From IMG/VR virus record IMGVR_UViG_3300023174_000042, positions 62,001 to 126,000 of that record: DNA of 64,000 nt. One strand, given 5' to 3'. The position numbers were made by a program, and so were the translations under genes. Below are positions 5,179-64,000 of this stretch, in pieces. The notes below the pieces were generated by a model. That model was not told the DNA's origin. It made no database searches and was given only the letters and a program-made list of their open reading frames with translations. The number at the start of each line of letters is the position of its first letter. The first letter of the stretch is position 1.

Positions 5179-5207
5179 TTATATGATAAATATTGATTTT
5201 ATTAATT

Positions 5208-24050: not shown

Positions 24051-25892
24051 CTACGAAAAGTTTACCGATCTGAGGTTTAAAACTCTGACATTTATATCTT
24101 TGTTTGGGTATCTAATTTGATATGTTTGTGTAGGTGTTGCAAACAAGGTGTCTGCGGTTGGTTGAATTTGTCTTGTGGCAGGGTCTGCATACGGCATAGA
24201 TGTTTGACTAGATGAATATTGTCCCCCAACTTGATTAAAGAATAAAATATCTGTAATACTTACAATTCCATTTTCTGACTGAATTAATCTTCTGAGTTCA
24301 GAAATATTAACATTTTGACCAAGGTTTCTAACTAGCGGGTTGAAGAAGTCGGTAATAATTTGAATTGTTTTTGAGATAATCGCTCCTTGATTTTGACTAT
24401 TGTCTAAAACAACATCAACTGTTACGGCCAAGTCTATTGTTTCTGCGGCTTCAATAGATATGTAGTCATTTATCATTCGATAGTTTGATAAATAATTTGC
24501 AACATTTTGTTTTAAAGTGTTTGACACAACATTTGTTAAAGTTCCGCTTGAATCATAAGACAACATTTTAATTTTTATCTTGTTGTTTTCTTCAGTTATG
24601 GCAACTTTTGCTGGTGCCCCAAATTGAGAAGGCATTGTTCTAATTAACGAATTGTAATCATTTACTGTTACGGCCCTGTTTTGTGCTGCGAAGTTAAATG
24701 CCACCAAATTTCTAACATCTTCAGTTGTTGGTGGATTTGCCCCACCAATGGCAGCAGTTACATTGTTACATTGTAAACTATTTATTACACTATTGTTTAC
24801 AGTTTGTGATGGTCCATTAACCGCAAATGAAACGGTTCCAATTTGGTTGATTGTATTAATACCTAAATTACTTGATAAACCACCACCAATTCTATATTGA
24901 ACAAATAATGTCGTGTTTGGCGAAAGAGCGGCACCTAAAGCATAATTATTTGTATATCTACTTAAATCAAACCCTTTCCCATCAATTGCAAATTGTCTTA
25001 ATTGTTCATCGGCAGAAATATTTCCCCCACCAAAAGTCATTTTACAAAATCCTTCAGGTGTATATTCAGAAATGAATTTGTTTGATGTTGTAATATATCT
25101 TCCCACTTTAATACCTGGTTGATCTGAAGTTTTGGTTGGGTCTTCAATAAAAACTCTATCTTGAACTAACGCATCAACTTCATACCATCTTTCGGGACCT
25201 AAACTTAAAAAATCTTGTGGGTTTGGAATTGTCGAATATTGTGTTCCAGGTTTTAATAAAACACTTGTAATACCCAAAACATTTTTTTCTGGTAAGAACA
25301 ATTCTAAATAAGGTTTTGAGTCATTTGGTGTAATTACTCTTTTATATACTTTTGTAATACCATTTACAACAACTTCTCTTTTTACGATCGTATAATTTAA
25401 TAATTTACCGCTAGAATCAAAGTTGGGAATTTTTACTCTGTTTGGTGATCCTTCGGCATTAATTGGTGATGCAAAGTCAATATCGTATACGGTTTCAAAC
25501 GGCTGTCCTCCACCATTAACTTGTGAACCCCTTCTTAAAACACCACAATATCTTAAATCTTCTCTATCTCCGAAGGCAGGAACTGTAATTGAAAAATCAA
25601 TTAAGGCAACTGATGGTCTTTGACCAGGAACTTTAAGACCATATGTTCTTGCAATATTATATACAGAATTTTTTTGTTGTGCGAATTGTAATACAGTTTC
25701 TTGTATACTTCGATCAATTTGATAATTTAAATTATCGGTGACCGCAGCATTCAAATCCAACATAACAGAAAAAATACCTGCGTCATTAAAATTTTGGACT
25801 AAGTCAGGATAATAGGCTCGTGTAAAGTTAATCAACTCGGTTCTTACACCTTGAAAGTCCCTTGCAACGTATGATATTTTCTTTTCTGCCAT
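24051..25892 (-). CDS. Baseplate wedge protein, T4 gp6/baseplate J-like
   Basis: ARDFQGVRTELINF...FNDAGIFSVMLDLNA...AQQKNSVYNIARTYG N-domain; GGANPPTTEDVR...AQNRAVTVNDY. Confidence 0.85.
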   Translation of the reverse strand: MAEKKISYVARDFQGVRTELINFTRAYYPDLVQNFNDAGIFSVMLDLNAAVTDNLNYQIDRSIQETVLQFAQQKNSVYNIARTYGLKVPGQRPSVALIDFSITVPAFGDREDLRYCGVLRRGSQVNGGGQPFETVYDIDFASPINAEGSPNRVKIPNFDSSGKLLNYTIVKREVVVNGITKVYKRVITPNDSKPYLELFLPEKNVLGITSVLLKPGTQYSTIPNPQDFLSLGPERWYEVDALVQDRVFIEDPTKTSDQPGIKVGRYITTSNKFISEYTPEGFCKMTFGGGNISADEQLRQFAIDGKGFDLSRYTNNYALGAALSPNTTLFVQYRIGGGLSSNLGINTINQIGTVSFAVNGPSQTVNNSVINSLQCNNVTAAIGGANPPTTEDVRNLVAFNFAAQNRAVTVNDYNSLIRTMPSQFGAPAKVAITEENNKIKIKMLSYDSSGTLTNVVSNTLKQNVANYLSNYRMINDYISIEAAETIDLAVTVDVVLDNSQNQGAIISKTIQIITDFFNPLVRNLGQNVNISELRRLIQSENGIVSITDILFFNQVGGQYSSSQTSMPYADPATRQIQPTADTLFATPTQTYQIRYPNKDINVRVLNLRSVNFS

Positions 25893-25898
25893 ATAATG

Positions 25899-26357
25899 TT
25901 AAATATTGATAATGATAAAATCTTGAGATTCAAAAGCCGAGTCGGTTATTTTATAGTCGATTTTGATTTTTGCGGTGTGCTCTAAAGTTGCTATATTAGT
26001 AACTTTGAACTCTCTTTCACCTTCTTTGTTTATTGTATAACCTTTATCCTCTAAACCTGCGGATGCTGGTTCTACACTTATATTGGTTACCTGTAAATTT
26101 GGCATATAAGTTCCAATGGTGCTTCTTATTTCGGCTTCAATATCTGAAAAAGTTGGTCCATCTAAAGGTTCAAATATAAACTCATAAAGACGAGTTCCAA
26201 AATCAGGTAAAAAATATCTAGATCCCTTTCTTGTTAATAATAAATGAACTAAATTTGCTCTTATTTCTCCCTCAGTTGAATTTGTTACGTCCAAATAACG
26301 ACCTGTAAAAGAGTCAACAAAAGGAAAAGAAATTCCATAAGTAATACCATTTGCCAT
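25899..26357 (-). CDS. Baseplate wedge subunit gp25-like (GPW/gp25)
   Basis: IRANLVHLLLTRKGSRYFLPDFGTRLYEFIFEP is the gp25 signature. Confidence 0.9.
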   Translation of the reverse strand: MANGITYGISFPFVDSFTGRYLDVTNSTEGEIRANLVHLLLTRKGSRYFLPDFGTRLYEFIFEPLDGPTFSDIEAEIRSTIGTYMPNLQVTNISVEPASAGLEDKGYTINKEGEREFKVTNIATLEHTAKIKIDYKITDSAFESQDFIIINI

Positions 26358-26425
26358 ATCACATATAAATATAGGTTAGGTTTTTTTTAAGTAAAAATTA
26401 CAGAAAAACTTTATTTACCTATACT

Positions 26426-28259: not shown

Positions 28260-29039
28260 TTAAGTATTTTCTTTTTTATTTTCAACAACTAATTTAAATG
28301 TAAACATATAATAATTCTTACCTTTTTTAACACATTTATAAGGTTCACCGTTTTTAGCTTTAACTCTAACAGTATGTGCTGGAATCCCTAAATGTTTATT
28401 AACCTCAACAGCACTTTCGTATCTACCATATTCAACACCATTATTATCGTAAACAATAATATAACCTAACCATCTTCCGTTTTTATTCCCACTTTTTACT
28501 TCAGACCACAATTTCCTTTTTTCTGGATCTTCTAAACTTTTTTTTACACCCATAGATAATTTATCTTTGTGTTCTTTTGTATTTACAACTTTCTTTAAAC
28601 CATTTAAAACTTTTACCCTATAATCTTTGTTTTCCCATTTTTTTCTTGTTAAATCACTCATTTTTTTTCTATAATCATCTGTTAAATTTTTTTTTGCCGT
28701 TTCAGATAATTTTTTACGAGTAATTTCTTTTAGTTCATCACATTTGTTTGTGAATGTGTCTCCACCAGTACCACCGATAGTGTAATTATATCCATTTAAA
28801 ACTGTATCATATTGTTCTATATATTGAACTTCTAAATCGTTTATTTTATCTGAAGTTGTTTGATTGAGAATTATAAACTCAAAATTATCCCATCCATAGT
28901 GTAGAATTGCATCATAAAGTTTGTGTCTTTTTTTTCCAACCAACATTTTATGTTCGGTTAATCTTTTATTTGGTCTTTTTGTTTTTCCAATGTATAGTTT
29001 ACCATTAATTTTATTTTTTATACAATATATATATTCCAT
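28260..29039 (-). mobile_element. Free-standing GIY-YIG homing endonuclease (Seg-like)
   Basis: YIYCIKNKINGKLYIGKT...RLTEH...YGWDNF...LE...GYN-x3-GG, then basic NUMOD-like repeats and a C-terminal HTH-like segment; start placed at ATG 29039 behind GGAGG (track uses ATG 29051). Confidence 0.9.
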
Positions 29040-29041
29040 AG

Positions 29042-29076
29042 AACCTCCCATTTATTTAATAAATATCTGGGAGGTT
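29042..29076 (-). promoter_or_regulatory. RBS-sequestering hairpin with a late promoter in its loop
   Basis: AACCTCCCA (29076-29068) pairs with TGGGAGGTT (29050-29042); loop contains TATTTAT (29065-29059). Confidence 0.8.
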
Positions 29077-51508: not shown

Positions 51509-51664
51509 TTATTTTTTTTCACTTTCAGTAACAAATTTATTTATAAGATATTTTCTTACATACGTTGGCATATTCAAAAACTCAGAGTATTGAGTTCTAA
51601 ATATTTTGGAAAAATAATAGAATTCGTCCAAAATTGTTGTTTTATATTGATAAGAAAGGCCGAA
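51509..51664 (-). CDS. Tail assembly chaperone C-terminal extension (gp51/TAC-C-like), probably reached by +1 frameshift
   Basis: Frame open from 51664 to TAA 51511-51509: FGLSYQYKTTILDEFYYFSKIFRTQYSEFLNMPTYVRKYLINKFVTESEKK; no ATG before the last 20 codons; not in the track. Confidence 0.7.
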   Translation of the reverse strand, partial: FGLSYQYKTTILDEFYYFSKIFRTQYSEFLNMPTYVRKYLINKFVTESEKK

Positions 51665-52412
51665 AAAACTCCACCCCAAAAGTAATGTCGACCATTACTC
51701 TTTCTCCTGACGGGGCTATTACTTCTTTTGATAGATCTAATCTTGGTTCATTTTCTGTTAAAAACTTTCTTATGTATTTGGAATCTGCAATTGGCATTTT
51801 TTCTATAAACATAGCAATATTTCCTTTGTCTGTATCTCCATCAATCTCAACAATTTGTTTTAGTAGTCTTGTTGTTATAGTTGGAATCGTTCTTCCAGCA
51901 GGATATAATTTTAAGGTATTTTCGATTTCAAATTTTTCTCCCATGTTTAAAATTTTCAGTTTTACATGATTTTTTGACACAGGAAGTATAGTCTCGAATA
52001 AACCTTCTTCGTTTGGTTGGAAATTGACTTTTTTATAGTTAAGTTCTTCTAAACTAATGGTAGTTTGAAATCTTTTGTCTGTTTCAGGGTCTACCGCTGT
52101 AATCGTGTATTCGGGGCCAAATGATGTATTTCGTAAAAATAAAAGAATTGCTTCAACATCCCCGTCTATTAATTCATCAGGTCTTAAATCTTTTTCATAG
52201 ATTTTATTTCTTAATAACGGAAATATAATGCTTTCAGTTATACTTTTTTTATAATCTGCCTCAGCAATTATGTTTTCATCAAAAGCGGTTAAATAACCAA
52301 CTTTTACTGATTTCTTTTTTGATTTATAAAATTTACCTTGACTTGGTAATTGTATTACATCGTGTGGTAAATTAAATTCGGCTTGACCGGCTTGATAAAC
52401 ATCTTGTTCCAT
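51642..52412 (-). CDS. T4 gp26-like baseplate hub/tail assembly chaperone (TAC-N)
   Basis: LPSQGKFY...VGYLTAFDENII...DVEAILLFLRNTSFG; ends ...GVEFFRPFLSI; lies between tube and tape measure genes. Confidence 0.8.
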   Translation of the reverse strand: MEQDVYQAGQAEFNLPHDVIQLPSQGKFYKSKKKSVKVGYLTAFDENIIAEADYKKSITESIIFPLLRNKIYEKDLRPDELIDGDVEAILLFLRNTSFGPEYTITAVDPETDKRFQTTISLEELNYKKVNFQPNEEGLFETILPVSKNHVKLKILNMGEKFEIENTLKLYPAGRTIPTITTRLLKQIVEIDGDTDKGNIAMFIEKMPIADSKYIRKFLTENEPRLDLSKEVIAPSGERVMVDITFGVEFFRPFLSI

Positions 52413-52543: not shown

Positions 52544-53032
52544 TTAATAAACTAATATACAACGGTCCATTCTCATCTGACAAGATATTTTTGCAACACC
52601 ATCTGATGAATATGTTAATGATCCCCCATCATACCCCAAAAGAAAAGTCCCTTCTAAAATCCATTTCTCGACAACAACACCAGTAGGGTCTAACATTTCA
52701 AGATCGACGTTTTTCTTATATCCCGCAGCATAACCCATACGACCTGTTACTGACTCAGCACATAATCTAATCCATTCCATAACCGCTTGTGATGCCGAAG
52801 GACCAATCGGGTCACGAAACGTTACGGGAAGTTCACCCCAATTGAATCTTCCTGCAACGAAAGTTGATGTATTTAAAAACTGAATCTCTGTAGATGCAAT
52901 TGTAAGTTTTGGTCTAGACGTTGTCTCAACATACCACTCATTTATTCCAAGTGACGATGGGAAACGTAGTATCCATCGGTTCTCCCTTTTCGGTTCGTAA
53001 GGGATAGGCATTTTCATTAATAAATCAGCCAT
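52544..53032 (-). CDS. Tail tube protein, T4 gp19-like
   Basis: EPKRENRWILRF, RPKLT, FVAGRFNWGELPVTFRD, YKKNVDLEMLDPTG...WILEG. Confidence 0.9.
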   Translation of the reverse strand: MADLLMKMPIPYEPKRENRWILRFPSSLGINEWYVETTSRPKLTIASTEIQFLNTSTFVAGRFNWGELPVTFRDPIGPSASQAVMEWIRLCAESVTGRMGYAAGYKKNVDLEMLDPTGVVVEKWILEGTFLLGYDGGSLTYSSDGVAKISCQMRMDRCILVY

Positions 53033-53969: not shown

Positions 53970-53989
53970 AACAATAAATATCTTAAATT

Positions 53990-54036: not shown

Positions 54037-57000
54037 TTAGATATTTTCAAACGACGCTCCTGTTGGAGTGATGTAGAAAGTAATATCAATAAATTCAAGA
54101 GCTCTTGTAGGTTTGATATAGATTTTTCCTGTTAATTGGTTTCTATCTAAATCTTCAGGAGAAGACGAAACGGTTACACGGAAGTCATATAAACCACGGT
54201 CTCTTCTAATGGCATCCAAGATAGGATTAACAGCGTTTAAGAAGTCTTGTCTAACTTGTGCGTCATTTTGTTCAAACAACAATCGAATAGATACTGCAGA
54301 AATCAATTTACGTGCTTGTAATAACAATCTTCTTACGTTAATTCTGTCAAGGGCCGACTCTCTAATTTGTAGAGTTTTGTTACCCCAAATTACAGTTCCC
54401 ACATCAGAGAAAGTAGCAATTGGGTTAATTCTACCAACATAAAGGATATCTCTGTCTTCTTGAGTTAGTTTCTTACGTGCTTTAATACAATTAACAATAC
54501 CACGAGTGTAACCAGCCGCCGCAAACCAAGGGAACGCGATGTTGTCTGTTAATGCTAAGTTTCTTGTAACTTCAGCCGTAGGTGGAATATAAATTTGGGT
54601 ATTATTCACACTATCTCTTGTTAACACCCAAGGATAATAAGTTGCCGTGTAGTTTGAGTCAATTCCTGTATTATCCAAGTTATTAACCGCCTCTGTAGGA
54701 TAAATGAAACCATCTATACCTGTAGTTGTTGGTAAATATAAGTCATAGTCAGGTGTCGTACAAACATAAAGTGAATCGGCTCTATTGAACTCAATCATTT
54801 GAACTGCGTCTTCAACTAAGTTACTGTTGTTTACATAGTCAATACCAGGTGTTACAAAAACGTTGATGTTTGTTGCTTCAGGATTGGCAAAAGTTTGTTG
54901 TCCTAATAAGTAAGCGTAATAGTCGGTATTTGCAAAATTTTGTGTTCCGTCGCCTAATGATATTTCTTTAAATGCACCCCAACCAACCGCAGTTGGATAT
55001 CTCGGTGAAGGACAAGCACCATTTAAGAAACCTCTTCTACCAATTTGGTATTCGTCAGTATTGGTTCTCCATTCTCTGTAAATATCCCATCCATCAAATC
55101 CACCTTGAACTAAGAATGTGAATTTACGTGCGAATAATCTGTAATAAACATTTGTAGGTGATTCAGGTTCTGTAATGAAAGATGAATTACCACAAACAAA
55201 TCTTGGTTCGCCACTTGTAGAGAACTCAGGTCCGATTGTAAGTCCACTGGCATTTACGTCCATGTGGAACCCTTCAGATCTGAAATTGAAAGGTAATCCT
55301 TCTATATCACAAGAATTAATTGGGTTTCTTTTTCCAACATACTCAAAGAATGATGGATCCCATCCATAAGAATTTGAAATACCTAAGTAAACTCTTCTTA
55401 CATTGTCACCAGGACTTGTAAGAGCATTATCATTTCCGGAAGACAAACCAAAAGGTGGGTTGTAAATTACTTCACCAGGGAAGTCATATTTCCCTTTGAT
55501 AATTGGGAATGGTGAATTAGCACCTGCGTAATTTCTAAAGTTAAACCCGTTAAACCCACAAGGGAGTGTGTCAATTGGAGCATCTTCACTCATTTCTACC
55601 ATTACATATTTTGAGTTAAGCATATATTCCCCATTTAGGGTTCCAATTTTATTTCCAATAAAATTGTTTTGACCCGGATCCATACCGCAGTTAGTGAATT
55701 TTTCTAAAACAACAGGGTTTGAATCAGTGTCAAAGTAATCACGAATTAAAACATCAAATGTTAAATTGTTATATGATTGATTAACAATTGAAATTTTAAT
55801 CAATGTGTTTGCTGCGTCACCGTCAGAAATTGTGTAAAATCTAAATAGGTCATAAACTTTATTACCCCTTAATTCTGAAACAACAAATGGAGATACTGGT
55901 GTTTGCCATTTATCTAAATACCAACCAATTGAATTTGGATCACCGCTTTGTGCCGAATCAAGAGCAATTAAATTAGGATTTAAACCTCTAATATAACCCT
56001 TCTTCCAAGAATAATTTAACCAAGATTGGAAGTTTTCTTCAGCAAAGACAGGAACTTCAATTCTAGGTTTTTGAAAGTTAGTAACTCCAAATACCTTAGT
56101 CCAATATTCAGGATCATTTTGTGTAAAAGAAGTTTCAAATGAGTAGTGAGTTCCAAAGTGGTCAACAACATTTACACCAAATGTGGAGTAAGGGTTTTTC
56201 AATACTGCTGAGTATTGACCGGTCATGTTAAGAGTGACATCTGATGTCCCTGTTACTGAATATTTTGGATTAGTAGCGTTTGTATAAGTCGAAATACCCC
56301 TTGATCTTAAAGTTCCTACAACTACATTGTCGTAATTTACATATGATGTTCCGGTATAGTAATAAATTTTACCAACAATCGTTCCTGAATAACAATCAAT
56401 ATTAACAGGAGTTGGTGTTGGAGTTGGGGATGTAAACGGTGAAGGTGTAATACAAGGATTTACAAATGAAGGAGTTGGTGTTGGAGATGCTGTTGCTTGT
56501 GGTGTTGGTGTTGGGTTTGGATAATAAGGTGTCAAACCTGAAACGTAAGTAAAGAATGAGTAACCACTATAGTGAGTATTTCCTGTATTTGTGAATAAAG
56601 CATAATACCAAGCATCATTTAATGGTGAAGTTAAACTTGTATCGTCAAGTGAAACTGAAGGAACATTAAAGACGTTAGTTGCTGCTGTCCATCCAGCACC
56701 TTCTAAAGTATTATAATCCATAGTATCTATTGAACCAAAATATGAAATATATTCATCTTCTGCCATATATGGATTAGAATCTGTTATTACATCAAAAATT
56801 AAATTTCTAATTTGTGAATCCAAGGTCGACGTTGATCCATTGAATTGTTCAAATTGAGAATAAAGAATGTCTTGAATTTCATCTGGAAAATCAGCATTGT
56901 ATCCAATTGTTGTCACAGAATTTGTACAAGCGGTAAAAGGAACTGTAAATGCCAATTCTTTAGGAGTAACACAAGTAGTTTCACAAGTTGTATAATCTGT

Positions 57001-57387
57001 AACTGAACTTAAACACCAAACACCAATAGTTGATGGGTTTACGTTAGCCACAGTTGTTACAGACCAAGATGGTCCTGCGTCATAACCCGATAAACCAAGG
57101 ATTCTTGTAACAAATAATTGATTAGATTGTTGCAAGTATGCTTTAGCGATATAAGATGCTTCATATTTAGGAATTTGAGTGTTTACAAATTTTTCTGGTG
57201 AAGTCCCACCAAACACCGTTTCAAATTCCGTGAAATTTGTTATAAAAATAGGTTCGAAAGCCGGACCTATTAAAGTTTCACCAACAATACCTAATGTAGT
57301 TACACCAACACTTTGAGCCACAAAGCTTAGGTCAACTTCAGAAGTATACACACCGGGCGAAACAAAAACCTTACTGTTAGTTGCCAT
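54037..57387 (-). CDS. Tail sheath protein (gp18-like) with a large insertion, 1116 aa
   Basis: SPGVYTSEVDLS, FGGTSPE, ATYYPW, PWFAAAG..RG, INPI, VIWGNKTL...DRINVRRL, IKPTRALEFI. Confidence 0.93.
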   Translation of the reverse strand: MATNSKVFVSPGVYTSEVDLSFVAQSVGVTTLGIVGETLIGPAFEPIFITNFTEFETVFGGTSPEKFVNTQIPKYEASYIAKAYLQQSNQLFVTRILGLSGYDAGPSWSVTTVANVNPSTIGVWCLSSVTDYTTCETTCVTPKELAFTVPFTACTNSVTTIGYNADFPDEIQDILYSQFEQFNGSTSTLDSQIRNLIFDVITDSNPYMAEDEYISYFGSIDTMDYNTLEGAGWTAATNVFNVPSVSLDDTSLTSPLNDAWYYALFTNTGNTHYSGYSFFTYVSGLTPYYPNPTPTPQATASPTPTPSFVNPCITPSPFTSPTPTPTPVNIDCYSGTIVGKIYYYTGTSYVNYDNVVVGTLRSRGISTYTNATNPKYSVTGTSDVTLNMTGQYSAVLKNPYSTFGVNVVDHFGTHYSFETSFTQNDPEYWTKVFGVTNFQKPRIEVPVFAEENFQSWLNYSWKKGYIRGLNPNLIALDSAQSGDPNSIGWYLDKWQTPVSPFVVSELRGNKVYDLFRFYTISDGDAANTLIKISIVNQSYNNLTFDVLIRDYFDTDSNPVVLEKFTNCGMDPGQNNFIGNKIGTLNGEYMLNSKYVMVEMSEDAPIDTLPCGFNGFNFRNYAGANSPFPIIKGKYDFPGEVIYNPPFGLSSGNDNALTSPGDNVRRVYLGISNSYGWDPSFFEYVGKRNPINSCDIEGLPFNFRSEGFHMDVNASGLTIGPEFSTSGEPRFVCGNSSFITEPESPTNVYYRLFARKFTFLVQGGFDGWDIYREWRTNTDEYQIGRRGFLNGACPSPRYPTAVGWGAFKEISLGDGTQNFANTDYYAYLLGQQTFANPEATNINVFVTPGIDYVNNSNLVEDAVQMIEFNRADSLYVCTTPDYDLYLPTTTGIDGFIYPTEAVNNLDNTGIDSNYTATYYPWVLTRDSVNNTQIYIPPTAEVTRNLALTDNIAFPWFAAAGYTRGIVNCIKARKKLTQEDRDILYVGRINPIATFSDVGTVIWGNKTLQIRESALDRINVRRLLLQARKLISAVSIRLLFEQNDAQVRQDFLNAVNPILDAIRRDRGLYDFRVTVSSSPEDLDRNQLTGKIYIKPTRALEFIDITFYITPTGASFENI

Positions 57388-57510
57388 ATTGTAAAATACT
57401 TTTAATTATTTATTTTTTTTTTATAAATACTTTGATTTTTATCAAAAACTTTACTTGGTAAAAAGTATTTATATCTTGGTATGATTTTATTCTGCCTTTT
57501 TTCTACCACT

Positions 57511-59256: not shown

Positions 59257-59285
59257 TTGATAAATATACAATTATTGATTATCTT
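59257..59285 (+). promoter_or_regulatory. Sigma70-like promoter overlapping a divergent late promoter
   Basis: TTGATA (59257-59262)-17 nt-TATCTT (59280-59285) on plus; TATTTAT on minus at 59266-59260. Confidence 0.5.
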
Positions 59286-59301
59286 TTTTAAAAGACTAAC
59301 T

Positions 59302-61062
59302 TTGGAAACTCAAAAGTCGCTTATAGAGTATAAAGCCATAGATATACTTGCCACTTATAGTGGTTCCAATAACTATATATTATATTTAAAAAACAAAAAA
59401 GAGTCTTCTTCAAAATTTTTTCCAACAAGAACACAAGCAGAATACATCGTAAATTATTCAAACACTGTTCCCAAAATCGCAAGAAAATGGGTTGAATTGG
59501 ATTCGTATTTTTCTAAGAAATTTGCGGAGGAAAAATATTTTATACAAACACCAAAAGAAATTTATATTGAGAAGTTATTAGTAGAAAAAGAAAAATCTTA
59601 TCATGTTTGGGCTAAATTTTTTGAAAAAGATCAACTATCGGAGTTTTGGATACCAAAATCCGCTCTTATTAAAAGTCATAACACCCAATCTGTTAATGTT
59701 GATTATTTGAAATATTCACATAGACCTCCTTTAGATCATCAAAAAATAGCAATTGAAAAACTAGCAGGGTCTAAAAGATTTATTTTGGCAGACGACATGG
59801 GTTTGGGGAAAACCACATCAACAATTATTGCGGCTCTTGAGACCGGAGCAAAAAAAATATTAATTGTTTGTCCTGCGTCTTTAAAGATAAATTGGCAAAG
59901 AGAAATCGAAAATTATTCCAATAGACCAGTTTTTATCGCAGAAGGAAAAAAATTTTCAACGGACCATGATTTTGTAATAATAAATTATGACATCTTAAAA
60001 AACTTTCATGACACAAAAGAAAAAGAAAATTCGTTATTAGAAAAATCTAATTTTGATTTAGTAATACTTGATGAAGCCCACATGATATCAAATGGTCAGG
60101 CTCAAAGAACAAAAATTATAAATAGTTTTGTAAAAAAAATAGATAAAGTTTGGTTATTAACAGGAACACCAATGACATCTCGACCTATGAATTATTATAA
60201 TCTATTAAACATAATAGAAAGTCCTGTTGCTCAAAATTGGAAGGCTTATGCGATTCGTTATTGTCAGGGATTTCAGTTTACGGCTGGTAAAAGAAAAGTA
60301 TGGAATGTATCGGGAGCGTCTAATTTAGAAGAATTAAGAGATAGAACTTCAAAACAAATATTAAGAAGACTTAAAGAAGATGTGTTAGATCTACCTGACA
60401 AAATTATAACACCAGTTTATTTGAGATTGAAATCAAAAGAATACGAAGAACTGATGGGTGATTATTATGATTGGTATGATAAAAACCCCGAAGAGTCATC
60501 ATCACTTACGGTTCAGTTTTCAAAGTTAATGAAAGTTAGAAAAGTAATCGCGAATGAAAAAACAAAACAAACTATTGAGTTTGCTGAAAACATAATAGAT
60601 CAAGGAAAAAAAGTTATTATATTTACAAACTTCACAGACACACTTCAGACAATACACCATCATTTTGGAAAACAATCTGTTTATCTTGACGGAAGTTGTT
60701 CTAATTCAGTTCGCCAACAAGCCGTCGACTTATTTCAAAATGATGAAAAAATTAAAGTCTTTGTTGGAAATTTAAAAGCGGCGGGAGTTGGTTTAACTCT
60801 AACAAGAGCAGAGGCGGTTATTATGAACGACTTATCTTTTGTTCCCGCAGAACATGCGCAAGCCGAGGACAGAGCATATCGTTATGGTCAAAAATCAAAC
60901 GTATTGGTTTATTATCCTTTGTTTGAAAATACTATTGAAGGGGTTATTTATGATATATTAAATAAGAAAAAACAAATCATTAGAACCGTTATGGGTGATG
61001 AAATACAAGAAAATGTTGGTGATGTTGCCGAGGAAATATTAAATCTAATCAACAAAAGGTGA
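59302..61062 (+). CDS. SNF2-family (HARP/SMARCAL1-like) helicase/annealing ATPase
   Basis: ILADDMGLGKT, LIVCPASLKINW, VILDEAH, LTGTP, RRLKEDVL, GVGLTL, QAEDRAYRYGQ; start placed at TTG 59302. Confidence 0.9.
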   Translation: METQKSLIEYKAIDILATYSGSNNYILYLKNKKESSSKFFPTRTQAEYIVNYSNTVPKIARKWVELDSYFSKKFAEEKYFIQTPKEIYIEKLLVEKEKSYHVWAKFFEKDQLSEFWIPKSALIKSHNTQSVNVDYLKYSHRPPLDHQKIAIEKLAGSKRFILADDMGLGKTTSTIIAALETGAKKILIVCPASLKINWQREIENYSNRPVFIAEGKKFSTDHDFVIINYDILKNFHDTKEKENSLLEKSNFDLVILDEAHMISNGQAQRTKIINSFVKKIDKVWLLTGTPMTSRPMNYYNLLNIIESPVAQNWKAYAIRYCQGFQFTAGKRKVWNVSGASNLEELRDRTSKQILRRLKEDVLDLPDKIITPVYLRLKSKEYEELMGDYYDWYDKNPEESSSLTVQFSKLMKVRKVIANEKTKQTIEFAENIIDQGKKVIIFTNFTDTLQTIHHHFGKQSVYLDGSCSNSVRQQAVDLFQNDEKIKVFVGNLKAAGVGLTLTRAEAVIMNDLSFVPAEHAQAEDRAYRYGQKSNVLVYYPLFENTIEGVIYDILNKKKQIIRTVMGDEIQENVGDVAEEILNLINKR

Positions 61063-61083
61063 TATTTATTTAATAAAAAAATT

Positions 61084-61984: not shown

Positions 61985-62006
61985 TAAATTATAAATATTT
62001 ATCATT

Positions 62007-64000
62007 ATGAAAGTATCATTTCAATACGAAAATAAAGACTTTAAGAAATATTCAAATTTTGTTAACAGGTTTATAAAACTCCTACAAAAAGAATTTCCTT
62101 TAAAAAACGATGTAAAAATCTTTTTTTTAAATGACAAAAAGGGGGAAATGTCCACTGGAAGTAGAATGCCAAATAACATAATTAAGGTTTTGGTCGCCAA
62201 CAGATTAAATCGCGACATTATGAGAACTTTGGCTCACGAATGGGTTCATGAATATCAAATGGATGTTCAGAAAAGAAAACAAGGTCCTAATATTGGTGGT
62301 AAAAACGAAGATGAAGCAAATGCGTTTGCTGGTAGACTTATTAAAATGTTTGAAAAAGACAACCCTAACTTAGAGGAAATGATGTATGAACAAAAAGGTA
62401 TCAGAGGTAAAATTAGTTTAATTAACGAAGAAATAATAACTGAAGAGAAAAAAACGATAAAAGAAAACTTTTTGGTTGAGATGAAAAAAATTGGAATTGA
62501 AAAATTACCATATTCATACTCTTCCTTGTCAAGATTTATTGATTCTAAAACAATGAACGTCCATTACAATAAACATTACAAAGGATATGTTGACAAATTA
62601 AATAAAGCCATAAAAAAAATTGATGGAGATATGGATTTAGAAGAAATTATTAGATCCATATCAAAATTTGACAAAAATATTAGAAATAACGCAGGAGGTT
62701 CTTTTAATCACGCTTTATTTTGGAAAATGTTGTCACCAAAAAAACAATTACCAAAAGGGGAAATTCTTAAAAAGATAAACAAAGACTTTGGAAACATAAA
62801 AAAAATGAAAGACGAGTTTAATCAAGCGGCAAAAGATCGTTTTGGATCAGGTTGGGCTTGGTTATACCTTAGCAAAGACGGAAAATTGAAAATAATGTCC
62901 ACCCCAAATCAGGATAATCCACTTATGAATGTTGTTAAAAAAGGTGGATTTCCATTATTGGGTTTAGATGTTTGGGAACATGCTTATTATTTGAAATATC
63001 AAAACAAACGAGATGAATATATCAATAACTTTTGGAATGTTGTAAATTGGGAGTTTGTAAATGATTTATATTTGTCAAAAACAAAAAAAGAAAACATTAA
63101 AGAAAATGTTGAGTCTAAAGAAATTATAAATGAGATCAGCTCAACATTTGCATTTCCATACACAGCAAAACAATTAAGAGAATTAATTCATTCGCAGTAT
63201 GTAGGATGCCATGGTCAACAATATAAAAATGGATGTATAGGAAAGATCCAAACAAAAAAATGTAAAACAGATATTGGTGTTTTAGGCGGTGATTATGCAG
63301 AAAAAAAACACGGAGGAACAAGTCAATGGTCTGTAATCAATCGTTTTGACACCAATGGCAAAGTCAAAAAAGAGATTTACAATATTTGGCAAGAAGAAAC
63401 AGAAGGAGTAACAGATTTTAAAACATGGATTAAAGAACATGCATACGATCTTTTTTCAAATGAAGGAATGTATTTAGATAGATTGGCCGAAATAAACGTT
63501 GGGACTATAGAAATTGGTAAAGAAAATGAGGGATACGCAACAAGTATCATCAAACAAATATATAAATTAAATCCTGATGAAGAAGGTATAACTTACGAAA
63601 TATATGAACATTGTTCGGGAGATGTTAATGATAGAAAAAAAGGTCAAGATATAGTTTTAAAAATTAAAGGTCACGACACAATTTATTTTCAAGTCAAACC
63701 ATTTTTAAATCAAAATAACGATATTCAATATTTTGATGGTGGAGATAGAGGACATTATTTCAAAGTAAATTCTTGGAACACAAACAAAAAATATAAAGAA
63801 GAAAATGTTGATGTAATAGTGTATGTTGATAGATCTGAACAAAAATATATTATGTTTAGAAACGATCATAGTAAAATTTTAACAATAGGAACCTCAAGAA
63901 AAAACATACCATATTTTATATATTATTATGAAATGCCGCTCAAAAGTAATTTCCAAGTTCCATTACAAAAAGAAACATCAAGTGCTCCCGTAAAACAATT
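62007..64000 (+). CDS. sodA: Three-domain fusion (3' truncated): IrrE/ImmA-like HExxH metallopeptidase + Mn-type superoxide dismutase + PD-(D/E)xK nuclease-like domain
   Basis: Hand-translated ORF open from ATG 62007 to the window end (664 codons; absent from the track because it has no stop). LAHEWVHE...EDEANAFA; LPYSY...HYNKH..GYV, GGSFNHALFW, FGSGWAWL, NQDNP, DVWEHAYY; GKENE...DRKKGQD-x13-QVK. The symbol applies to the SOD domain only. Confidence 0.88.
   Translation, partial: MKVSFQYENKDFKKYSNFVNRFIKLLQKEFPLKNDVKIFFLNDKKGEMSTGSRMPNNIIKVLVANRLNRDIMRTLAHEWVHEYQMDVQKRKQGPNIGGKNEDEANAFAGRLIKMFEKDNPNLEEMMYEQKGIRGKISLINEEIITEEKKTIKENFLVEMKKIGIEKLPYSYSSLSRFIDSKTMNVHYNKHYKGYVDKLNKAIKKIDGDMDLEEIIRSISKFDKNIRNNAGGSFNHALFWKMLSPKKQLPKGEILKKINKDFGNIKKMKDEFNQAAKDRFGSGWAWLYLSKDGKLKIMSTPNQDNPLMNVVKKGGFPLLGLDVWEHAYYLKYQNKRDEYINNFWNVVNWEFVNDLYLSKTKKENIKENVESKEIINEISSTFAFPYTAKQLRELIHSQYVGCHGQQYKNGCIGKIQTKKCKTDIGVLGGDYAEKKHGGTSQWSVINRFDTNGKVKKEIYNIWQEETEGVTDFKTWIKEHAYDLFSNEGMYLDRLAEINVGTIEIGKENEGYATSIIKQIYKLNPDEEGITYEIYEHCSGDVNDRKKGQDIVLKIKGHDTIYFQVKPFLNQNNDIQYFDGGDRGHYFKVNSWNTNKKYKEENVDVIVYVDRSEQKYIMFRNDHSKILTIGTSRKNIPYFIYYYEMPLKSNFQVPLQKETSSAPVKQ

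What the first reader, a model, noticed from the sequence alone, without database searches (positions are those of the whole stretch)
62007..64000. Unannotated polyprotein: IrrE-like peptidase + Mn-SOD + PD-(D/E)xK nuclease joined by protease-site linkers
Seen: one uninterrupted frame. Domain 1 has HEWVHE (62235-62252) and EDEANAFA. Domain 2 keeps all SOD metal ligands (DVWEHAYY at 62967-62990) plus the GG and NQD residues typical of Mn-specific enzymes. Domain 3 has GKENE...D(63630)RKKGQD...QVK(63690-63698). Both linkers are packed with I/L-x-E sites: SLINE-EIITE-EKKTIKE-NFLVE and NIKE-NVESKEIINE. Known: T4 prohead protease gp21 cuts after I/L-x-E; IrrE/ImmA/CapP (M78) peptidases cleave stress or defence repressors. 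Inference: a late-expressed polyprotein (TATTTAT 4 nt before ATG) is packaged and cut in the head into three effectors delivered with the DNA: an antioxidant, a regulator-cleaving protease and a nuclease. SOD is normally a stand-alone dimer or tetramer, so this fusion is unusual.
Basis: partly seen in the sequence, partly recalled or inferred. Interest (0 to 1): 0.9.

Follow-up and report, generated by a model that had tools for sequence, protein, structure and literature searches.

The report
Modular phage superoxide dismutase with swappable partners
An uncultured giant lake phage makes one 714-residue protein that joins a small zinc-protease-like domain, a manganese-type superoxide dismutase and an exchangeable nuclease-like end piece, with conserved Leu/Ile-x-Glu motifs at both joints that look like cutting sites, though neither cutting nor packaging into the virus particle has been shown.

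Summary
Window 62007-64000 is an uninterrupted frame. The source contig (272,576 bp) shows a 714-aa gene, so only 50 residues lie beyond the window.

- **Domains.** Domain 2 is a clear Fe/Mn SOD with all four metal ligands and Mn-type markers. Domain 1 folds as a minimal HExxH+Glu zincin (pLDDT 87). It cannot be assigned to IrrE/M78. Domain 3 has a restriction-endonuclease-like core; the best fold match is the PD-(D/E)xK enzyme I-Ssp6803I.
- **Not a chimera.** There are 209 relatives in IMG/VR and more than 1,000 protein clusters.
- **Architecture.** The SOD is the invariant core, the zincin is optional, and the C-terminus is a swappable cassette: at least three unrelated classes, a distant relative of the window's class, or none. 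Two genomes about 99% identical on both sides differ only in this cassette.
- **Domain 1 family.** Its 1,669 hits occur alone or inside large multi-enzyme phage proteins, one of which also carries a SOD. This fits the "polyvalent protein" pattern.
- **Junction motif.** Both junctions keep [IL]-x-E. After the SOD, 84 of 85 distinct junction strings have it.
- **Context.** The gene has a conserved TATTTAT promoter-like motif, shared with tail genes, and lies next to a gp13-like neck gene.

Cleavage, head packaging and the protease responsible remain untested.

The parts
61990..62002 (+). Promoter-like element: ATATTTAT (61995-62002), overlapped by TATAAATA (61990-61997), 4 nt before the ATG
   Evidence: TATTTAT lies in sense orientation within 45 nt upstream of 17/38 window genes, against 5/38 in antisense. 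It is kept at the same position before this gene in 29/38 distinct relatives while the flanks diverge. It also precedes the downstream gp13-like gene.
62007..64000 (+). Open reading frame of the fusion protein (residues 1-664 of 714; it continues 145 nt beyond the window)
   Evidence: Translation without stops. The full ORF is L001:10001-12145 on the source contig IMGVR_UViG_3300023174_000042 / Ga0214921_10000035.
62007..62399 (+). Domain 1: minimal gluzincin metallopeptidase-like domain (residues 1-131). HExxH is H77/E78/H81 (62235-62249); the candidate third ligand lies in E101-D-E103 (62307-62315).
   Evidence: AlphaFold model pLDDT 87, with zincin topology: strand, helix, three strands, HExxH helix, Glu helix. 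Foldseek matches are Wss1 (prob 0.99), M61, PprI/IrrE, YbeY, BepA and thermolysin. Invariant residues include H77, E78, H81, E101, D102, E103 and N105. The profile finds 1,669 relatives. No Pfam, PHROG, NCBIfam or PADLOC family matches.
62400..62486 (+). Linker 1: amphipathic helix (residues 132-160) ending in L156-V-E158 | M159-K-K (62472-62483)
   Evidence: Predicted helix 132-159, pLDDT 62-82. [IL]xE at 156-158 occurs in 52/58 relatives, and E158, M159 and K160 are invariant in A1. A homologous N-terminal helix is kept in SOD proteins that lack domain 1. M159 aligns within a few residues of the normal SOD N-terminus.
62487..63077 (+). Domain 2: Fe/Mn-family superoxide dismutase, Mn-type (residues 161-357). 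Ligands are H186, H235, D321 and H325.
   Evidence: Pfam Sod_Fe_N 1.4e-21 and Sod_Fe_C 1e-41. PDB MnSODs match at E 4e-66 with the ligand motifs aligned. The NCBIfam Mn model scores 205 bits against 167 for the Fe model.
63078..63146 (+). Linker 2 (residues 358-380): Lys-rich, predicted disordered, with I364-K-E366 (63096-63104) and I374-N-E376 (63126-63134). The cassette breakpoint lies after codon 360 (63086).
   Evidence: pLDDT is 28-30 for residues 359-380. E366 and E376 are the only invariant residues in this stretch. The motif is present in cassette classes A, B, C and D and in 84/85 distinct junction strings. The nucleotide breakpoint is at L001:11080.
63147..63473 (+). Domain 3, N-terminal subdomain (residues 381-489): Cys-rich, with invariant C401, C410, C419 and an NRFDTN motif
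   Evidence: Invariant columns of alignment A2. Modelled at pLDDT about 75-95. No family assignment.
63474..63980 (+). Domain 3 core (residues 490-658): restriction-endonuclease-like (PD-(D/E)xK-type) fold. Candidate catalytic set is E508 (63528-63530), D548 (63648-63650) and Q562-V-K564 (63690-63698).
   Evidence: Foldseek PDB matches: I-Ssp6803I E 1.6e-3, prob 1.0, target TM 0.47-0.52; also 3ijm, PvuII and SPARDA. BFVD matches: a 1,113-aa marine phage protein at E 6e-8, and proteins labelled NOV_C, RecU and Cas4. Residues are invariant. It is a separate ORF in one relative.
63981..64000 (+). Start of the C-terminal tail: a disordered segment, then a helical hairpin (residues 670-714) that lies mostly beyond the window
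   Evidence: Model helices 312-332 and 338-355 of the domain-3 model. The sequence comes from L001.

Best explanation
**Shown.** This is a genuine single gene of an uncultured ~273-kb myovirus-type jumbo phage with T4-like sheath, tube, gp25, gp6 and gp13 homologues. It encodes a modular protein.
- The invariant core is a Mn-type superoxide dismutase with an intact active site.
- In front sits a small HExxH+Glu zincin. Its family is widespread in aquatic phages, both as a ~130-aa stand-alone gene and as a module inside large proteins that string together unrelated enzymes.
- Behind the SOD sits an exchangeable cassette. In this phage it is a restriction-endonuclease-fold domain with a Cys-rich head and a coiled-coil tail.
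- Each of the genes here has its own copy of the phage's TATTTAT promoter-like element, which also precedes tail and neck genes.

**Inferred.** The protein is a polyvalent-type effector.
- The SOD removes superoxide in the infected cell, protecting phage DNA and proteins.
- The zincin and the nuclease-like cassette act on host or competitor macromolecules.
- The conserved Lys-rich [IL]-[KN]-E-[SN] motif at the SOD-cassette joint and the [IL]-x-E before M159 are cutting sites for a Glu-specific protease, so the modules are released as separate polypeptides.

**My estimates**
- Domain identities: about 0.9.
- Polyvalent-type modular effector: about 0.6.
- Cut at one or both joints: about 0.45.
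- Packaged in the capsid and delivered with the DNA: about 0.3.
For: - The ORF and its full length.
- The SOD.
- The zincin fold and invariant catalytic residues.
- The domain-1 family has 1,669 hits. Members are fused to P-loop kinases, poly(A)-polymerase-type nucleotidyltransferases and an RNase T exonuclease. In the 1,547-aa P0158 it is fused to a SOD plus a second HExxH domain, a kinase and a HAD-like end.
- The REase-like fold of domain 3.
- Architectures: 33 loci of class A, 24 of class B, 1 of class C and 13 with no cassette. SOD proteins lacking the zincin also exist.
- Domain 3 is a separate ORF in L080.
- A clean cassette swap between genomes about 99% identical, with the breakpoint upstream of the motif, so each cassette carries its own.
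- Junction motif: E366 and E376 are the only invariant residues in the disordered linker. 84/85 distinct junction strings have the motif. The positional shuffle product is 2e-4 over five classes. Similar IKED and LNES motifs occur at the P0158 joints.
- [IL]xE[SEDNG] lies upstream of domain 1 in 12/32 multidomain relatives, against a 14.5% background.
- The promoter-like motif and the gp13-like neighbour.
- Literature: polyvalent proteins with zincin hubs (PMC5512222); prohead proteases of T4, phiKZ and SPN3US cut after Glu (PMC5694885, PMC9958956); ROS-defence genes, including SODs, in freshwater phages (PMC6802176).
Against: - There is no experimental or proteomic evidence for cleavage, packaging or any of the three activities.
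- Domain 1 matches no curated family, including Pfam's polyvalent-protein peptidase model, so its link to the published polyvalent-protein peptidases is by analogy.
- With three domains the protein sits at the small end of that class.
- [IL]xE is compositionally favoured in I/L/E/K-rich linkers of an AT-rich genome. The position window for the shuffle test was chosen after seeing the data.
- Linker 1 is a predicted helix, and relatives lacking domain 1 keep it.
- The TATTTAT motif also precedes a DnaB-like helicase and a GIY-YIG gene. The gene lies between an SNF2 helicase and DNA polymerase B as much as next to gp13.
- Domain 3 has Gln where the classic motif has Asp/Glu. Its fold matches are only moderate (E about 1e-3, target TM about 0.5).
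Confidence: 0.5

Rival explanations
1. The protein is a late product that is loaded into the prohead and cut there after Glu by a T4 gp21-type protease. This yields a zincin, a SOD and a nuclease that are injected with the DNA at the next infection.
For: - Conserved [IL]-x-E at both joints, matching the T4-type preference (from my own knowledge) and the general rule that these proteases cut after Glu (PMC5694885).
- T4-like virion genes in the phage: sheath, tube, gp25, gp6, gp13.
- A promoter-like motif shared with those genes.
- Giant-phage ejection proteins can carry N-terminal propeptides of more than 100 residues (PMC5694885).
- The separately encoded domain-3 homologue still starts with a ~20-aa leader containing INE.
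Against: - No gp21-like protease, scaffold or capsid gene was recognised in contig positions 52-155 kb. The other 170 kb could not be read.
- The N-terminus is a folded strand, not a short targeting peptide.
- The zincin has a fully conserved active site, which is odd for a mere propeptide.
- No virion data exist.
Confidence: 0.27
2. The protein is an uncleaved, cytoplasmic multi-domain enzyme. An auxiliary antioxidant SOD, as described for freshwater phages, works as an intact dimer with accessory domains. Possible themes are DNA-damage tolerance (a Wss1/SprT-like protease for DNA-protein crosslinks plus a nuclease) or the SOD acting simply as a dimerisation scaffold. The linkers are ordinary spacers.
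For: - Phage SODs are known ROS-defence genes in lake phages (PMC6802176).
- The best fold match of domain 1 is the crosslink protease Wss1.
- The neighbours include an SNF2 helicase and DNA polymerase B.
- Linker 1 is helical and is retained without domain 1.
- [IL]xE is expected fairly often from composition.
Against: - Only the two Glu residues are invariant in an otherwise free-drifting disordered linker.
- The same motif is brought in by unrelated cassettes.
- Domain 3 also works as a separate gene.
- Partners of domain 1 elsewhere (kinases, nucleotidyltransferases, an exonuclease) do not fit a single repair pathway.
Confidence: 0.33
3. Self-processing. Domain 1 is the protease that cuts its own polyprotein at the [IL]-x-E-[SN] joints, in cis or in trans. 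This is what has been proposed for zincin domains of polyvalent proteins.
For: - The catalytic residues are invariant.
- Domain 1 recurs in multidomain proteins, and a similar motif is enriched just upstream of it (12/32 against a 14.5% background, p about 0.001).
- IKED and LNES motifs occur at P0158 joints.
- The autoproteolysis proposal is in PMC5512222.
Against: - Relatives with SOD plus cassette but no domain 1 keep the junction motif.
- Most family members are stand-alone ~130-aa proteins with nothing to process.
- The 364-aa variants keep domain 1 with no cassette to release.
- The enrichment is modest and some of the sequences are related.
Confidence: 0.15
4. Artefact: an assembly chimera or a read-through of adjacent genes.
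For: - One relative (L035) has the frame interrupted at codon 190.
- One lineage has domain 3 as a separate ORF.
Against: - The same fusion occurs on 209 IMG/VR stretches from many samples and in more than 1,000 protein clusters at 90% identity, with complete ORFs of 702-738 aa.
- The same 714-aa product lies on two contigs of about 272.6 kb, with JGI/IMG and ENA as sources.
Confidence: 0.01

Closest known systems
Polyvalent proteins of phages and conjugative elements (Iyer, Burroughs, Anand, de Souza, Aravind 2017; PMC5512222)
   Same: - Phage-encoded.
- Unrelated enzymatic domains in one polypeptide.
- A zincin-like HExxH+Glu metallopeptidase domain acts as the recurrent hub.
- Variable domain combinations.
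- Proposed proteolytic release of the modules.
   Different: - Only three domains here.
- The invariant core is a SOD, a domain not mentioned in that paper (0 occurrences of 'superoxide').
- Domain 1 matches no Pfam family.
- A defined junction motif and clean cassette swapping are seen here.
- Delivery with the DNA is unproven.
Phage-encoded ROS-defence auxiliary genes in freshwater phages (Kavagutti et al. 2019; PMC6802176)
   Same: - Lake phages carry superoxide dismutases and other antioxidant genes.
- These are thought to protect the infected cell and the phage's own DNA and proteins.
   Different: - The text I read lists SODs only among ROS-defence genes and says nothing of their architecture.
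- Here the SOD is embedded between a zincin and a swappable cassette.
- It is driven by the motif shared with virion genes.
T4 internal proteins and Alt, and ejection proteins of phiKZ/SPN3US-type giant phages, processed by the prohead protease (PMC9958956, PMC5694885)
   Same: - Enzymes made late, cut C-terminal to Glu at a short x-X-E motif, carried in the head and injected.
- Long propeptides exist in giant phages.
- The motif here, [IL]-x-E, matches the T4-type preference (my own knowledge: Black, Showe and Steven 1994).
   Different: - No N-terminal targeting peptide.
- No protease gene identified.
- No virion evidence.
- Cuts would be internal, between folded enzymes, rather than the removal of a propeptide.
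ImmA/IrrE (M78) and CapP regulator-cleaving metallopeptidases
   Same: - HExxH followed about 20 residues later by a Glu in an 'E-x-E-A-N-x-F-A'-like helix. The resemblance of this motif to M78 is recalled from memory.
- Weak fold matches to PprI, IrrE and CapP.
   Different: - No Pfam M78 hit, even at E up to 1, and no PADLOC hit.
- No sequence match to solved IrrE/PprI structures.
- No partner HTH repressor or sensor domain.
- Wss1 and M61 score better.
Wss1/SprT-type minimal zincins
   Same: Best fold match (prob 0.99, TM 0.48/0.57), with similar size and topology.
   Different: - The third metal ligand is probably Glu, not the His of the HExxHx5H motif (my own knowledge of the Wss1 motif).
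- No DNA-binding or SUMO/ubiquitin-binding parts.
- 15% identity.
I-Ssp6803I and other PD-(D/E)xK restriction-endonuclease-fold nucleases
   Same: Core fold, with the Glu on a helix, the Asp before a strand and x-K on the next strand.
   Different: - Gln replaces the acidic residue of the (D/E)xK triad.
- There is a large Cys-rich N-terminal subdomain and a coiled-coil tail.
- No sequence-level family match.
Virion-packaged Cu,Zn-SODs of giant eukaryotic viruses (Megavirus chilensis, chlorovirus PBCV-1; recalled from memory, not checked here)
   Same: A virus carrying its own SOD into the next host cell: a precedent for the idea.
   Different: - A different SOD family and different hosts.
- Stand-alone enzymes.
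- Packaging is demonstrated there and not here.

Membership tests
Fe/Mn superoxide dismutase (Pfam PF00081 + PF02777) | Both Pfam domains score above the gathering threshold | tested here: met
   Sod_Fe_N 77 bits (cut-off 27) and Sod_Fe_C 141 bits (cut-off 20.9).
Fe/Mn superoxide dismutase (Pfam PF00081 + PF02777) | Four metal ligands (His, His, Asp, His) | tested here: met
   H186, H235, D321 and H325 lie in motifs that align residue for residue with solved MnSODs.
Fe/Mn superoxide dismutase (Pfam PF00081 + PF02777) | Mn-type rather than Fe-type | tested here: inconclusive
   The GG and the Gln of NQD are present. The Mn model scores 205 bits against 167 for Fe, but both are far below the equivalog cut-offs of 363 and 348. 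Top PDB matches are MnSODs. Metal specificity needs an assay.
Fe/Mn superoxide dismutase (Pfam PF00081 + PF02777) | Superoxide dismutase activity | not testable with these tools
   Needs an enzyme assay or complementation of a laboratory sodA sodB strain.
Peptidase M78 (ImmA/IrrE) | Match to the family profile (Pfam PF06114) | tested here: not met
   No hit at E up to 1 for the domain alone or for the whole protein. None in PADLOC or NCBIfam.
Peptidase M78 (ImmA/IrrE) | HExxH plus a downstream Glu ligand | tested here: met
   H77, E78, H81 and E101/E103 are invariant. This feature is shared by all gluzincins and is not specific to M78.
Peptidase M78 (ImmA/IrrE) | Specific structural similarity to IrrE/PprI/ImmA | tested here: inconclusive
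   PprI prob 0.41 and IrrE prob 0.25-0.54 rank below Wss1 (0.99) and M61 (0.95).
Peptidase M78 (ImmA/IrrE) | Partner repressor (HTH) gene, or a sensor domain in the same protein | tested here: not met
   Neither the protein nor its neighbours show one.
Zincin-like metallopeptidase hub of polyvalent proteins (PMC5512222) | Zincin core: three-stranded sheet, N-terminal helix, HExxH helix, Glu helix | tested here: met
   Secondary-structure order of the model and its Foldseek matches.
Zincin-like metallopeptidase hub of polyvalent proteins (PMC5512222) | Recurs in phage proteins that combine several unrelated enzymatic domains | tested here: met
   Relatives are fused to AAA_33/Zeta-type kinases, PolyA_pol, RNase_T and an adenylate-cyclase-N-like domain. 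P0158 combines SOD, kinase and a HAD-like end. The contexts are phage-like contigs.
Zincin-like metallopeptidase hub of polyvalent proteins (PMC5512222) | Belongs to one of the 12 published clades or to the Pfam polyvalent-peptidase model | tested here: not met
   No Pfam family covers domain 1 in this protein or in 20 relatives scanned. The published alignments were not available for comparison.
Zincin-like metallopeptidase hub of polyvalent proteins (PMC5512222) | Delivered with the DNA and/or autoprocessing | not testable with these tools
   Needs virion proteomics and expression of wild type against E78A.
PD-(D/E)xK restriction-endonuclease-like nucleases | Core alpha-beta-beta-beta-alpha-beta fold | tested here: met
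   I-Ssp6803I at E 1.6e-3, prob 1.0, target TM 0.47-0.52. Other REase-fold entries appear lower in the list. Proteins labelled NOV_C, RecU and Cas4 appear in BFVD. Model pLDDT is 80.
PD-(D/E)xK restriction-endonuclease-like nucleases | Catalytic E ... D ... (D/E)xK residues on the right elements | tested here: inconclusive
   E508 lies on the long helix, D548 just before a strand and Q562-V-K564 on the next strand, and all are invariant. Gln replaces the acidic residue, and no residue-level superposition was available.
PD-(D/E)xK restriction-endonuclease-like nucleases | Match to a curated nuclease family | tested here: not met
   No hit in Pfam, PHROGs, NCBIfam, PADLOC or PDB sequences.
Substrates of T4-type prohead proteases (internal or ejection proteins) | Conserved x-X-Glu cleavage motif at the processing points | tested here: met
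   [IL]xE occurs at 156-158 in 52/58 relatives. E366 and E376 are invariant. 84/85 distinct junction strings carry the motif. The motif is present; cleavage was not tested.
Substrates of T4-type prohead proteases (internal or ejection proteins) | N-terminal capsid-targeting propeptide | tested here: not met
   Residues 3-7 already form the first strand of the folded zincin.
Substrates of T4-type prohead proteases (internal or ejection proteins) | A prohead protease of that type encoded by the phage | tested here: inconclusive
   None was recognised in contig positions 52-155 kb.
Substrates of T4-type prohead proteases (internal or ejection proteins) | Presence in virions as processed fragments | not testable with these tools
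   No isolate exists; this needs proteomics.

The most novel reading that the evidence does not exclude
A very abundant clade of freshwater jumbo phages loads its capsid with a cut-apart 'kit': an antioxidant enzyme (Mn-SOD), a zinc protease and an exchangeable warhead. The parts are released at a conserved [IL]-[KN]-E-[SN] site by a Glu-specific protease and injected with the DNA. This would be the first packaged SOD in a bacteriophage. It would also be a natural plug-and-play system in which C-terminal effector cassettes, each bringing its own cleavage site, are swapped between near-identical genomes.
Probability: 0.27. Interest if true: 0.8.

Novelty: new variant of a known kind. Interest (0 to 1): 0.6.

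Why it matters
SODs in phages have been treated as simple auxiliary genes. Here the SOD is the fixed centre of a modular protein family that is very common in lake metagenomes: more than 1,000 clusters at 90% identity, on contigs up to about 296 kb.

- **Diversifying selection.** The exchangeable end pieces, together with the near-identical genomes that differ only in the cassette, point to strong diversifying selection of the kind seen in conflict systems.
- **A testable handle.** The conserved junction motif allows a direct test of how multi-enzyme phage proteins are taken apart. For polyvalent proteins this has been proposed but rarely shown.
- **Uncharacterised domains.** The zincin family (about 1,700 hits, no curated model) and at least two cassette classes have no known function.
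- **If the SOD is delivered with the DNA.** This would link oxidative stress to the first minutes of infection in bacteria, as proposed for giant viruses of eukaryotes.
- **Possible tool.** The junction could become a practical linker for protein cargo in T4-like capsids.

Tried and rejected
**Searches that found nothing**
- Pfam, PHROGs, NCBIfam and PADLOC gave no family for domain 1, domain 3, cassette classes B, C and D, or the neighbouring 235-aa ORF. The only hints were weak: DUF6055 at 5e-4 for domain 1, and a type II REase model at 0.024 for class B.
- Sequence searches of PDB with single sequences and with profiles found nothing for domains 1 and 3.
- tblastn against 50,697 GenBank phage records found only stand-alone SODs and no fusion. 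The DNA polymerase has no close cultured relative; the best matches are 22-31% identical, from Salinibacter and Nostoc phages.
- Walking the source contig with exact-protein look-ups covered positions 52-155 kb. No portal, protease, scaffold or capsid gene with a Pfam hit appeared. Two large unknown ORFs had no capsid or portal match in PDB. One look-up failed because I gave wrong coordinates.
- The scan of 185,579 species genomes gave only MAG-binned contigs (Polynucleobacter, Crocinitomicaceae, Woesearchaeota, Firmicutes), which look like phage contigs or stand-alone SODs. The host is unresolved.
- The window holds no tRNA genes.
- The 103 kb read holds no paralogues of the three domains.

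**Ideas rejected**
- Class B is not a fusion with the downstream 374-aa gene. That gene is conserved and separate in all architectures.
- Assembly chimera.
- Membership of M78/IrrE.
- The mere density of [IL]xE as evidence: composition makes it likely.
- TATTTAT as a strictly late signal: it also precedes the DnaB-like and GIY-YIG genes.

Full report
**1. The observation**

The frame starting at ATG 62007 runs without a stop to the window end, 664 codons. A scan of IMG/VR returned the source contig, IMGVR_UViG_3300023174_000042, which is JGI Ga0214921_10000035 and 272,576 bp long. The window corresponds to contig positions 62,001-126,000. The ORF there is 714 aa (L001:10001-12145), so only 50 residues were missing.

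**2. Genomic setting**

- GC content is about 31%.
- The window carries T4-like tail genes:
  - a sheath gene at 54037-57387;
  - a weak gp19-like tube hit at 52544-53032;
  - a baseplate hub at 51642-52412;
  - a gp25-like gene at 25899-26357;
  - a wedge gene at 24051-25892.
- Replication and recombination genes are interleaved with them: DnaB-like, UvsX-like, SSB, an exonuclease, ribonucleotide reductase and a RuvC-like resolvase.
- The gene of interest lies in a short plus-strand cluster: an SNF2 helicase, a 235-aa ORF, a 66-aa ORF, the fusion, a 374-aa gene and a 115-aa gene. DNA polymerase B follows on the other strand.
- The 374-aa gene is T4 gp13-like, a neck protein (precomputed PF26809; PHROG adaptor hit).
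- No cultured relative exists in GenBank phages.
- Three hints point to a Bacteroidota host, unproven:
  - there are no Shine-Dalgarno sequences and the leaders are A-rich;
  - a neighbouring ORF carries SprB repeats;
  - the closest solved SODs are entries I recall as Sphingobacterium enzymes (the organism is from memory).

**3. The three domains**

*SOD, residues 161-357.* Both Pfam SOD domains score far above threshold. Solved MnSODs match at E 4e-66, with the ligand motifs aligned (H186, H235, D321, H325). The Mn model outscores the Fe model in NCBIfam, 205 bits against 167.

*Domain 1, residues 1-131.* No curated family matches. An AlphaFold model built from 22 relatives has pLDDT 87. Its order of elements is the classical zincin one: strand, helix, three strands, HExxH helix, Glu helix. 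Foldseek returns only zincins: Wss1 (prob 0.99), an M61 peptidase, PprI/IrrE, YbeY, BepA, thermolysin and, weakly, CapP. H77, E78, H81, E101, D102, E103 and N105 are invariant. It is therefore a probably active minimal gluzincin. The specific 'IrrE-like' label is not supported.

*Domain 3, residues 381-714.* The model has pLDDT 80. It shows:
- a Cys-rich subdomain;
- a core whose best PDB match is the PD-(D/E)xK homing endonuclease I-Ssp6803I (E 1.6e-3, prob 1.0, target TM about 0.5), with other restriction-fold entries lower in the list;
- a C-terminal helical hairpin.

In BFVD it matches a 1,113-aa marine phage protein (E 6e-8) and small phage proteins labelled NOV_C, RecU or Cas4. The invariant E508, D548 and Q562-x-K564 sit on the expected helix and strands.

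**4. The fusion is real, and the SOD is its fixed point**

IMG/VR holds 209 related stretches, and I examined 79 loci.

| Architecture | Loci | Length (aa) |
|---|---|---|
| As in the window (class A) | 33 | 702-716 |
| Unrelated ~375-aa C-terminus (class B) | 24 | 729-738 |
| Third C-terminus (class C) | 1 | 699 |
| Stop right after the SOD | 13 | 362-367 |

- The remaining 8 of the 79 loci are 6 ORFs cut by a contig end, one interrupted ORF (L035) and one 344-aa hit whose match begins at residue 19 (L075).
- The downstream gp13-like and 115-aa genes are conserved and separate in every architecture.
- Two further relatives with the same synteny lack the zincin. They keep a 25-38-residue N-terminal helix before the SOD. 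They also carry a shorter C-terminus (class D) that is a distant homologue of domain 3.
- In one of these relatives, a 57%-identical homologue of domain 3 is a separate ORF starting one base after the stop.
- The large protein database holds 1,293 clusters of SOD-containing proteins of 393-1,250 aa at E below 1e-10. Nearly all of the 120 best listed belong to this family, mostly 684-741 aa long, and their sources name them only 'Fe-Mn family superoxide dismutase'.

**5. Cassette swapping**

Protein P0182 is 358/360 identical to the window protein up to residue 360 and then unrelated. At nucleotide level, L001 and L093 are 98.9% identical up to L001:11080 (window 63086, after codon 360). The identity resumes at 98.1% six bases after the stop codon. 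The unit exchanged is therefore exactly 'linker 2 + C-terminal domain + stop', and the left breakpoint lies in an A-rich Lys-coding tract.

**6. Domain 1 belongs to a large phage family with polyvalent-type architectures**

A profile search of 1.84 billion representatives gave 1,669 hits, 270 of them below 1e-10. Many are stand-alone proteins of 125-135 aa on phage-like contigs. Others are embedded in large proteins alongside:
- P-loop (AAA_33/Zeta-type) kinases;
- a poly(A)-polymerase-type nucleotidyltransferase;
- an RNase T exonuclease;
- adenylate-cyclase-N-like domains.

P0158 is a 1,547-aa protein from a Tara Oceans contig. It combines an HxGH-type nucleotidyltransferase-like start, a second HExxH domain, a SOD (617-813), domain 1 (972-1086), a kinase and a HAD-like end. 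The nucleotidyltransferase-like start, the second HExxH domain and the HAD-like end are my reading of sequence motifs. The SOD and the kinase have Pfam hits, and domain 1 comes from the profile search.

This is the architecture theme described for polyvalent proteins, in which a zincin is the hub domain and autoproteolysis was proposed (PMC5512222). That paper does not mention superoxide dismutase.

**7. The junction motifs**

Position and conservation are stronger.

- *Linker 2 is probably disordered.* Residues 359-380 have pLDDT around 30. In the 14-sequence class-A alignment the only invariant residues in this stretch are E366 and E376, the Glu of the two motifs.
- *Every long variant of classes A, B and C has the motif.* An [IL]xE lies 12-17 residues after the last conserved SOD motif, VNWEFV.
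- *The wider database agrees.* Among 116 clusters, 84 of 85 distinct junction strings have it, and the exception has VNE. The consensus is Lys-rich, then [IL]-[KN]-E-[SN].
- *Each cassette brings its own copy.* The recombination breakpoint lies upstream of the motif.
- *A positional shuffle test gives a product of 2e-4 over five classes.* I chose the position window after seeing the data.
- *At the zincin-SOD joint,* [IL]xE at 156-158 is kept in 52/58 relatives, and E158, M159 and K160 are invariant.
- *Two facts weaken the linker-1 case.* This linker is a predicted helix that persists without the zincin. M159 also aligns near the ancestral SOD start, so structure or an internal start could explain its conservation.
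- *Similar motifs occur in more distant relatives.* IKED, IKED and LNES lie at three joints of P0158. [IL]xE[SEDNG] is enriched in the 30 residues before domain 1 in multidomain relatives: 12/32 against a 14.5% background, p about 0.001, with some of the sequences related.

**8. Expression signal**

TATTTAT, usually ATATTTAT, lies 4-35 nt upstream of 17/38 window genes in sense orientation, against 5/38 in antisense. These genes include the sheath, tube-like and gp25-like genes, but also the DnaB-like helicase and a GIY-YIG gene.

Before this gene the motif is kept at the same place in 29/38 distinct relatives while the flanks diverge. The gp13-like gene has its own copy. The element is real and is shared with virion genes. 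'Late' remains an inference.

**9. Mechanism**

Prohead proteases of T4, phiKZ and SPN3US cut C-terminal to Glu at short x-X-E motifs. They process proteins that are then injected, and some of these carry propeptides of more than 100 residues (PMC5694885; PMC9958956). A conserved Glu motif in a disordered, Lys-rich joint of a T4-like-tailed phage fits such a protease, or the protein's own zincin.

Against packaging:
- the N-terminus has no targeting peptide;
- no protease or capsid gene was seen in the 103 kb I could read;
- there are no proteomic data.

My reading is a polyvalent-type modular effector with the SOD at its core. I put the probability of cutting at the joints at about 0.45 and of capsid delivery at about 0.3. 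The ordinary alternative is an intact cytoplasmic antioxidant enzyme with accessory domains, in line with the ROS-defence genes of lake phages (PMC6802176). That alternative remains nearly as likely.

**10. Novelty**

Phage SODs, polyvalent proteins and Glu-specific head proteases are all known. Four things are new here:
- a SOD as the fixed core of a modular family;
- an uncurated zincin family of about 1,700 hits;
- clean exchange of C-terminal cassettes between near-identical genomes;
- a defined junction motif carried by each cassette.

I rate this a new variant of a known kind, with interest 0.6. No step had to be referred.

Noticed in passing
window, e.g. 5186-5192(-), 26365-26371(-), 53974-53980(-), 57423-57429(-), 61063-61069(+), 61996-62002(+): A phage-specific promoter-like motif, (A)TATTTAT, lies 4-35 nt upstream of 17 of 38 genes in sense orientation. 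With such short spacing to the ATG and no Shine-Dalgarno sequence, the transcripts may be nearly leaderless.
   Followed up: partly
L001:12174-13298 (just beyond the window end); L093:6123-7247: The gene immediately downstream of the fusion is a T4 gp13-like neck protein (PF26809), followed by a conserved 115-aa gene. Both are syntenic in all relatives.
   Followed up: partly
window 59257-61062 (+) versus L093:195-3056: The SNF2-type helicase is 601 aa here (TTG start) but 953 aa in a ~99%-identical relative. The extra part hits Hom_end_hint and LAGLIDADG, which suggests an intein insertion.
   Followed up: no
L001:11081-12150 versus L093:5081-6099: Two genomes 98-99% identical on both sides carry unrelated C-terminal cassettes. 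The left breakpoint lies in an A-rich tract after codon 360, and the right one six bases after the stop.
   Followed up: yes
L082:1831-6474 (P0158, Tara Oceans contig): A 1,547-aa phage protein combines a nucleotidyltransferase-like start, two HExxH domains, a SOD, a P-loop kinase and a HAD-like end (T4 Pnk-like arrangement). It sits next to primase-like and PD-(D/E)xK genes.
   Followed up: partly
L080:4245-5774 and 5776-6852; L087:5959-7512: Relatives in which the SOD protein lacks the zincin, keeps an N-terminal helix and carries a shorter nuclease-like end. In L080 both adjacent ORFs begin MKYI and have an [IL]xE within the first ~25 residues.
   Followed up: partly
L035:10001-10573 and 10625-12145: In one relative the fusion frame is interrupted at codon 190 and a 506-aa ORF follows. 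This is a frameshift, a pseudogene or a sequencing error.
   Followed up: no
window 5208-7283 (-): A 691-aa ORF in the tail-fibre region carries SprB repeats, a Bacteroidota gliding-adhesin motif. This is a host hint.
   Followed up: no
window 28260-29051 (-): A GIY-YIG endonuclease gene with its own TATTTAT motif sits between the ribonucleotide reductase and baseplate genes. It is probably a homing endonuclease.
   Followed up: no
L094 / L095 (contig 136-155 kb): A cluster of glycosyltransferases (Glycos_transf_1, GlcNAc, HtrL_YibB, DUF2827) and a Laminin_G_3 protein lies downstream of the polymerase. Their function in the phage is unknown.
   Followed up: no
L076:11066-12097 (class C cassette); L040:10814-11941 (class B cassette): Class C contains a GFEFEG ... 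YDIITP ... ISCK pattern reminiscent of restriction-fold nucleases. Class B has a weak hit to a type II restriction enzyme model (E 0.024).
   Followed up: no
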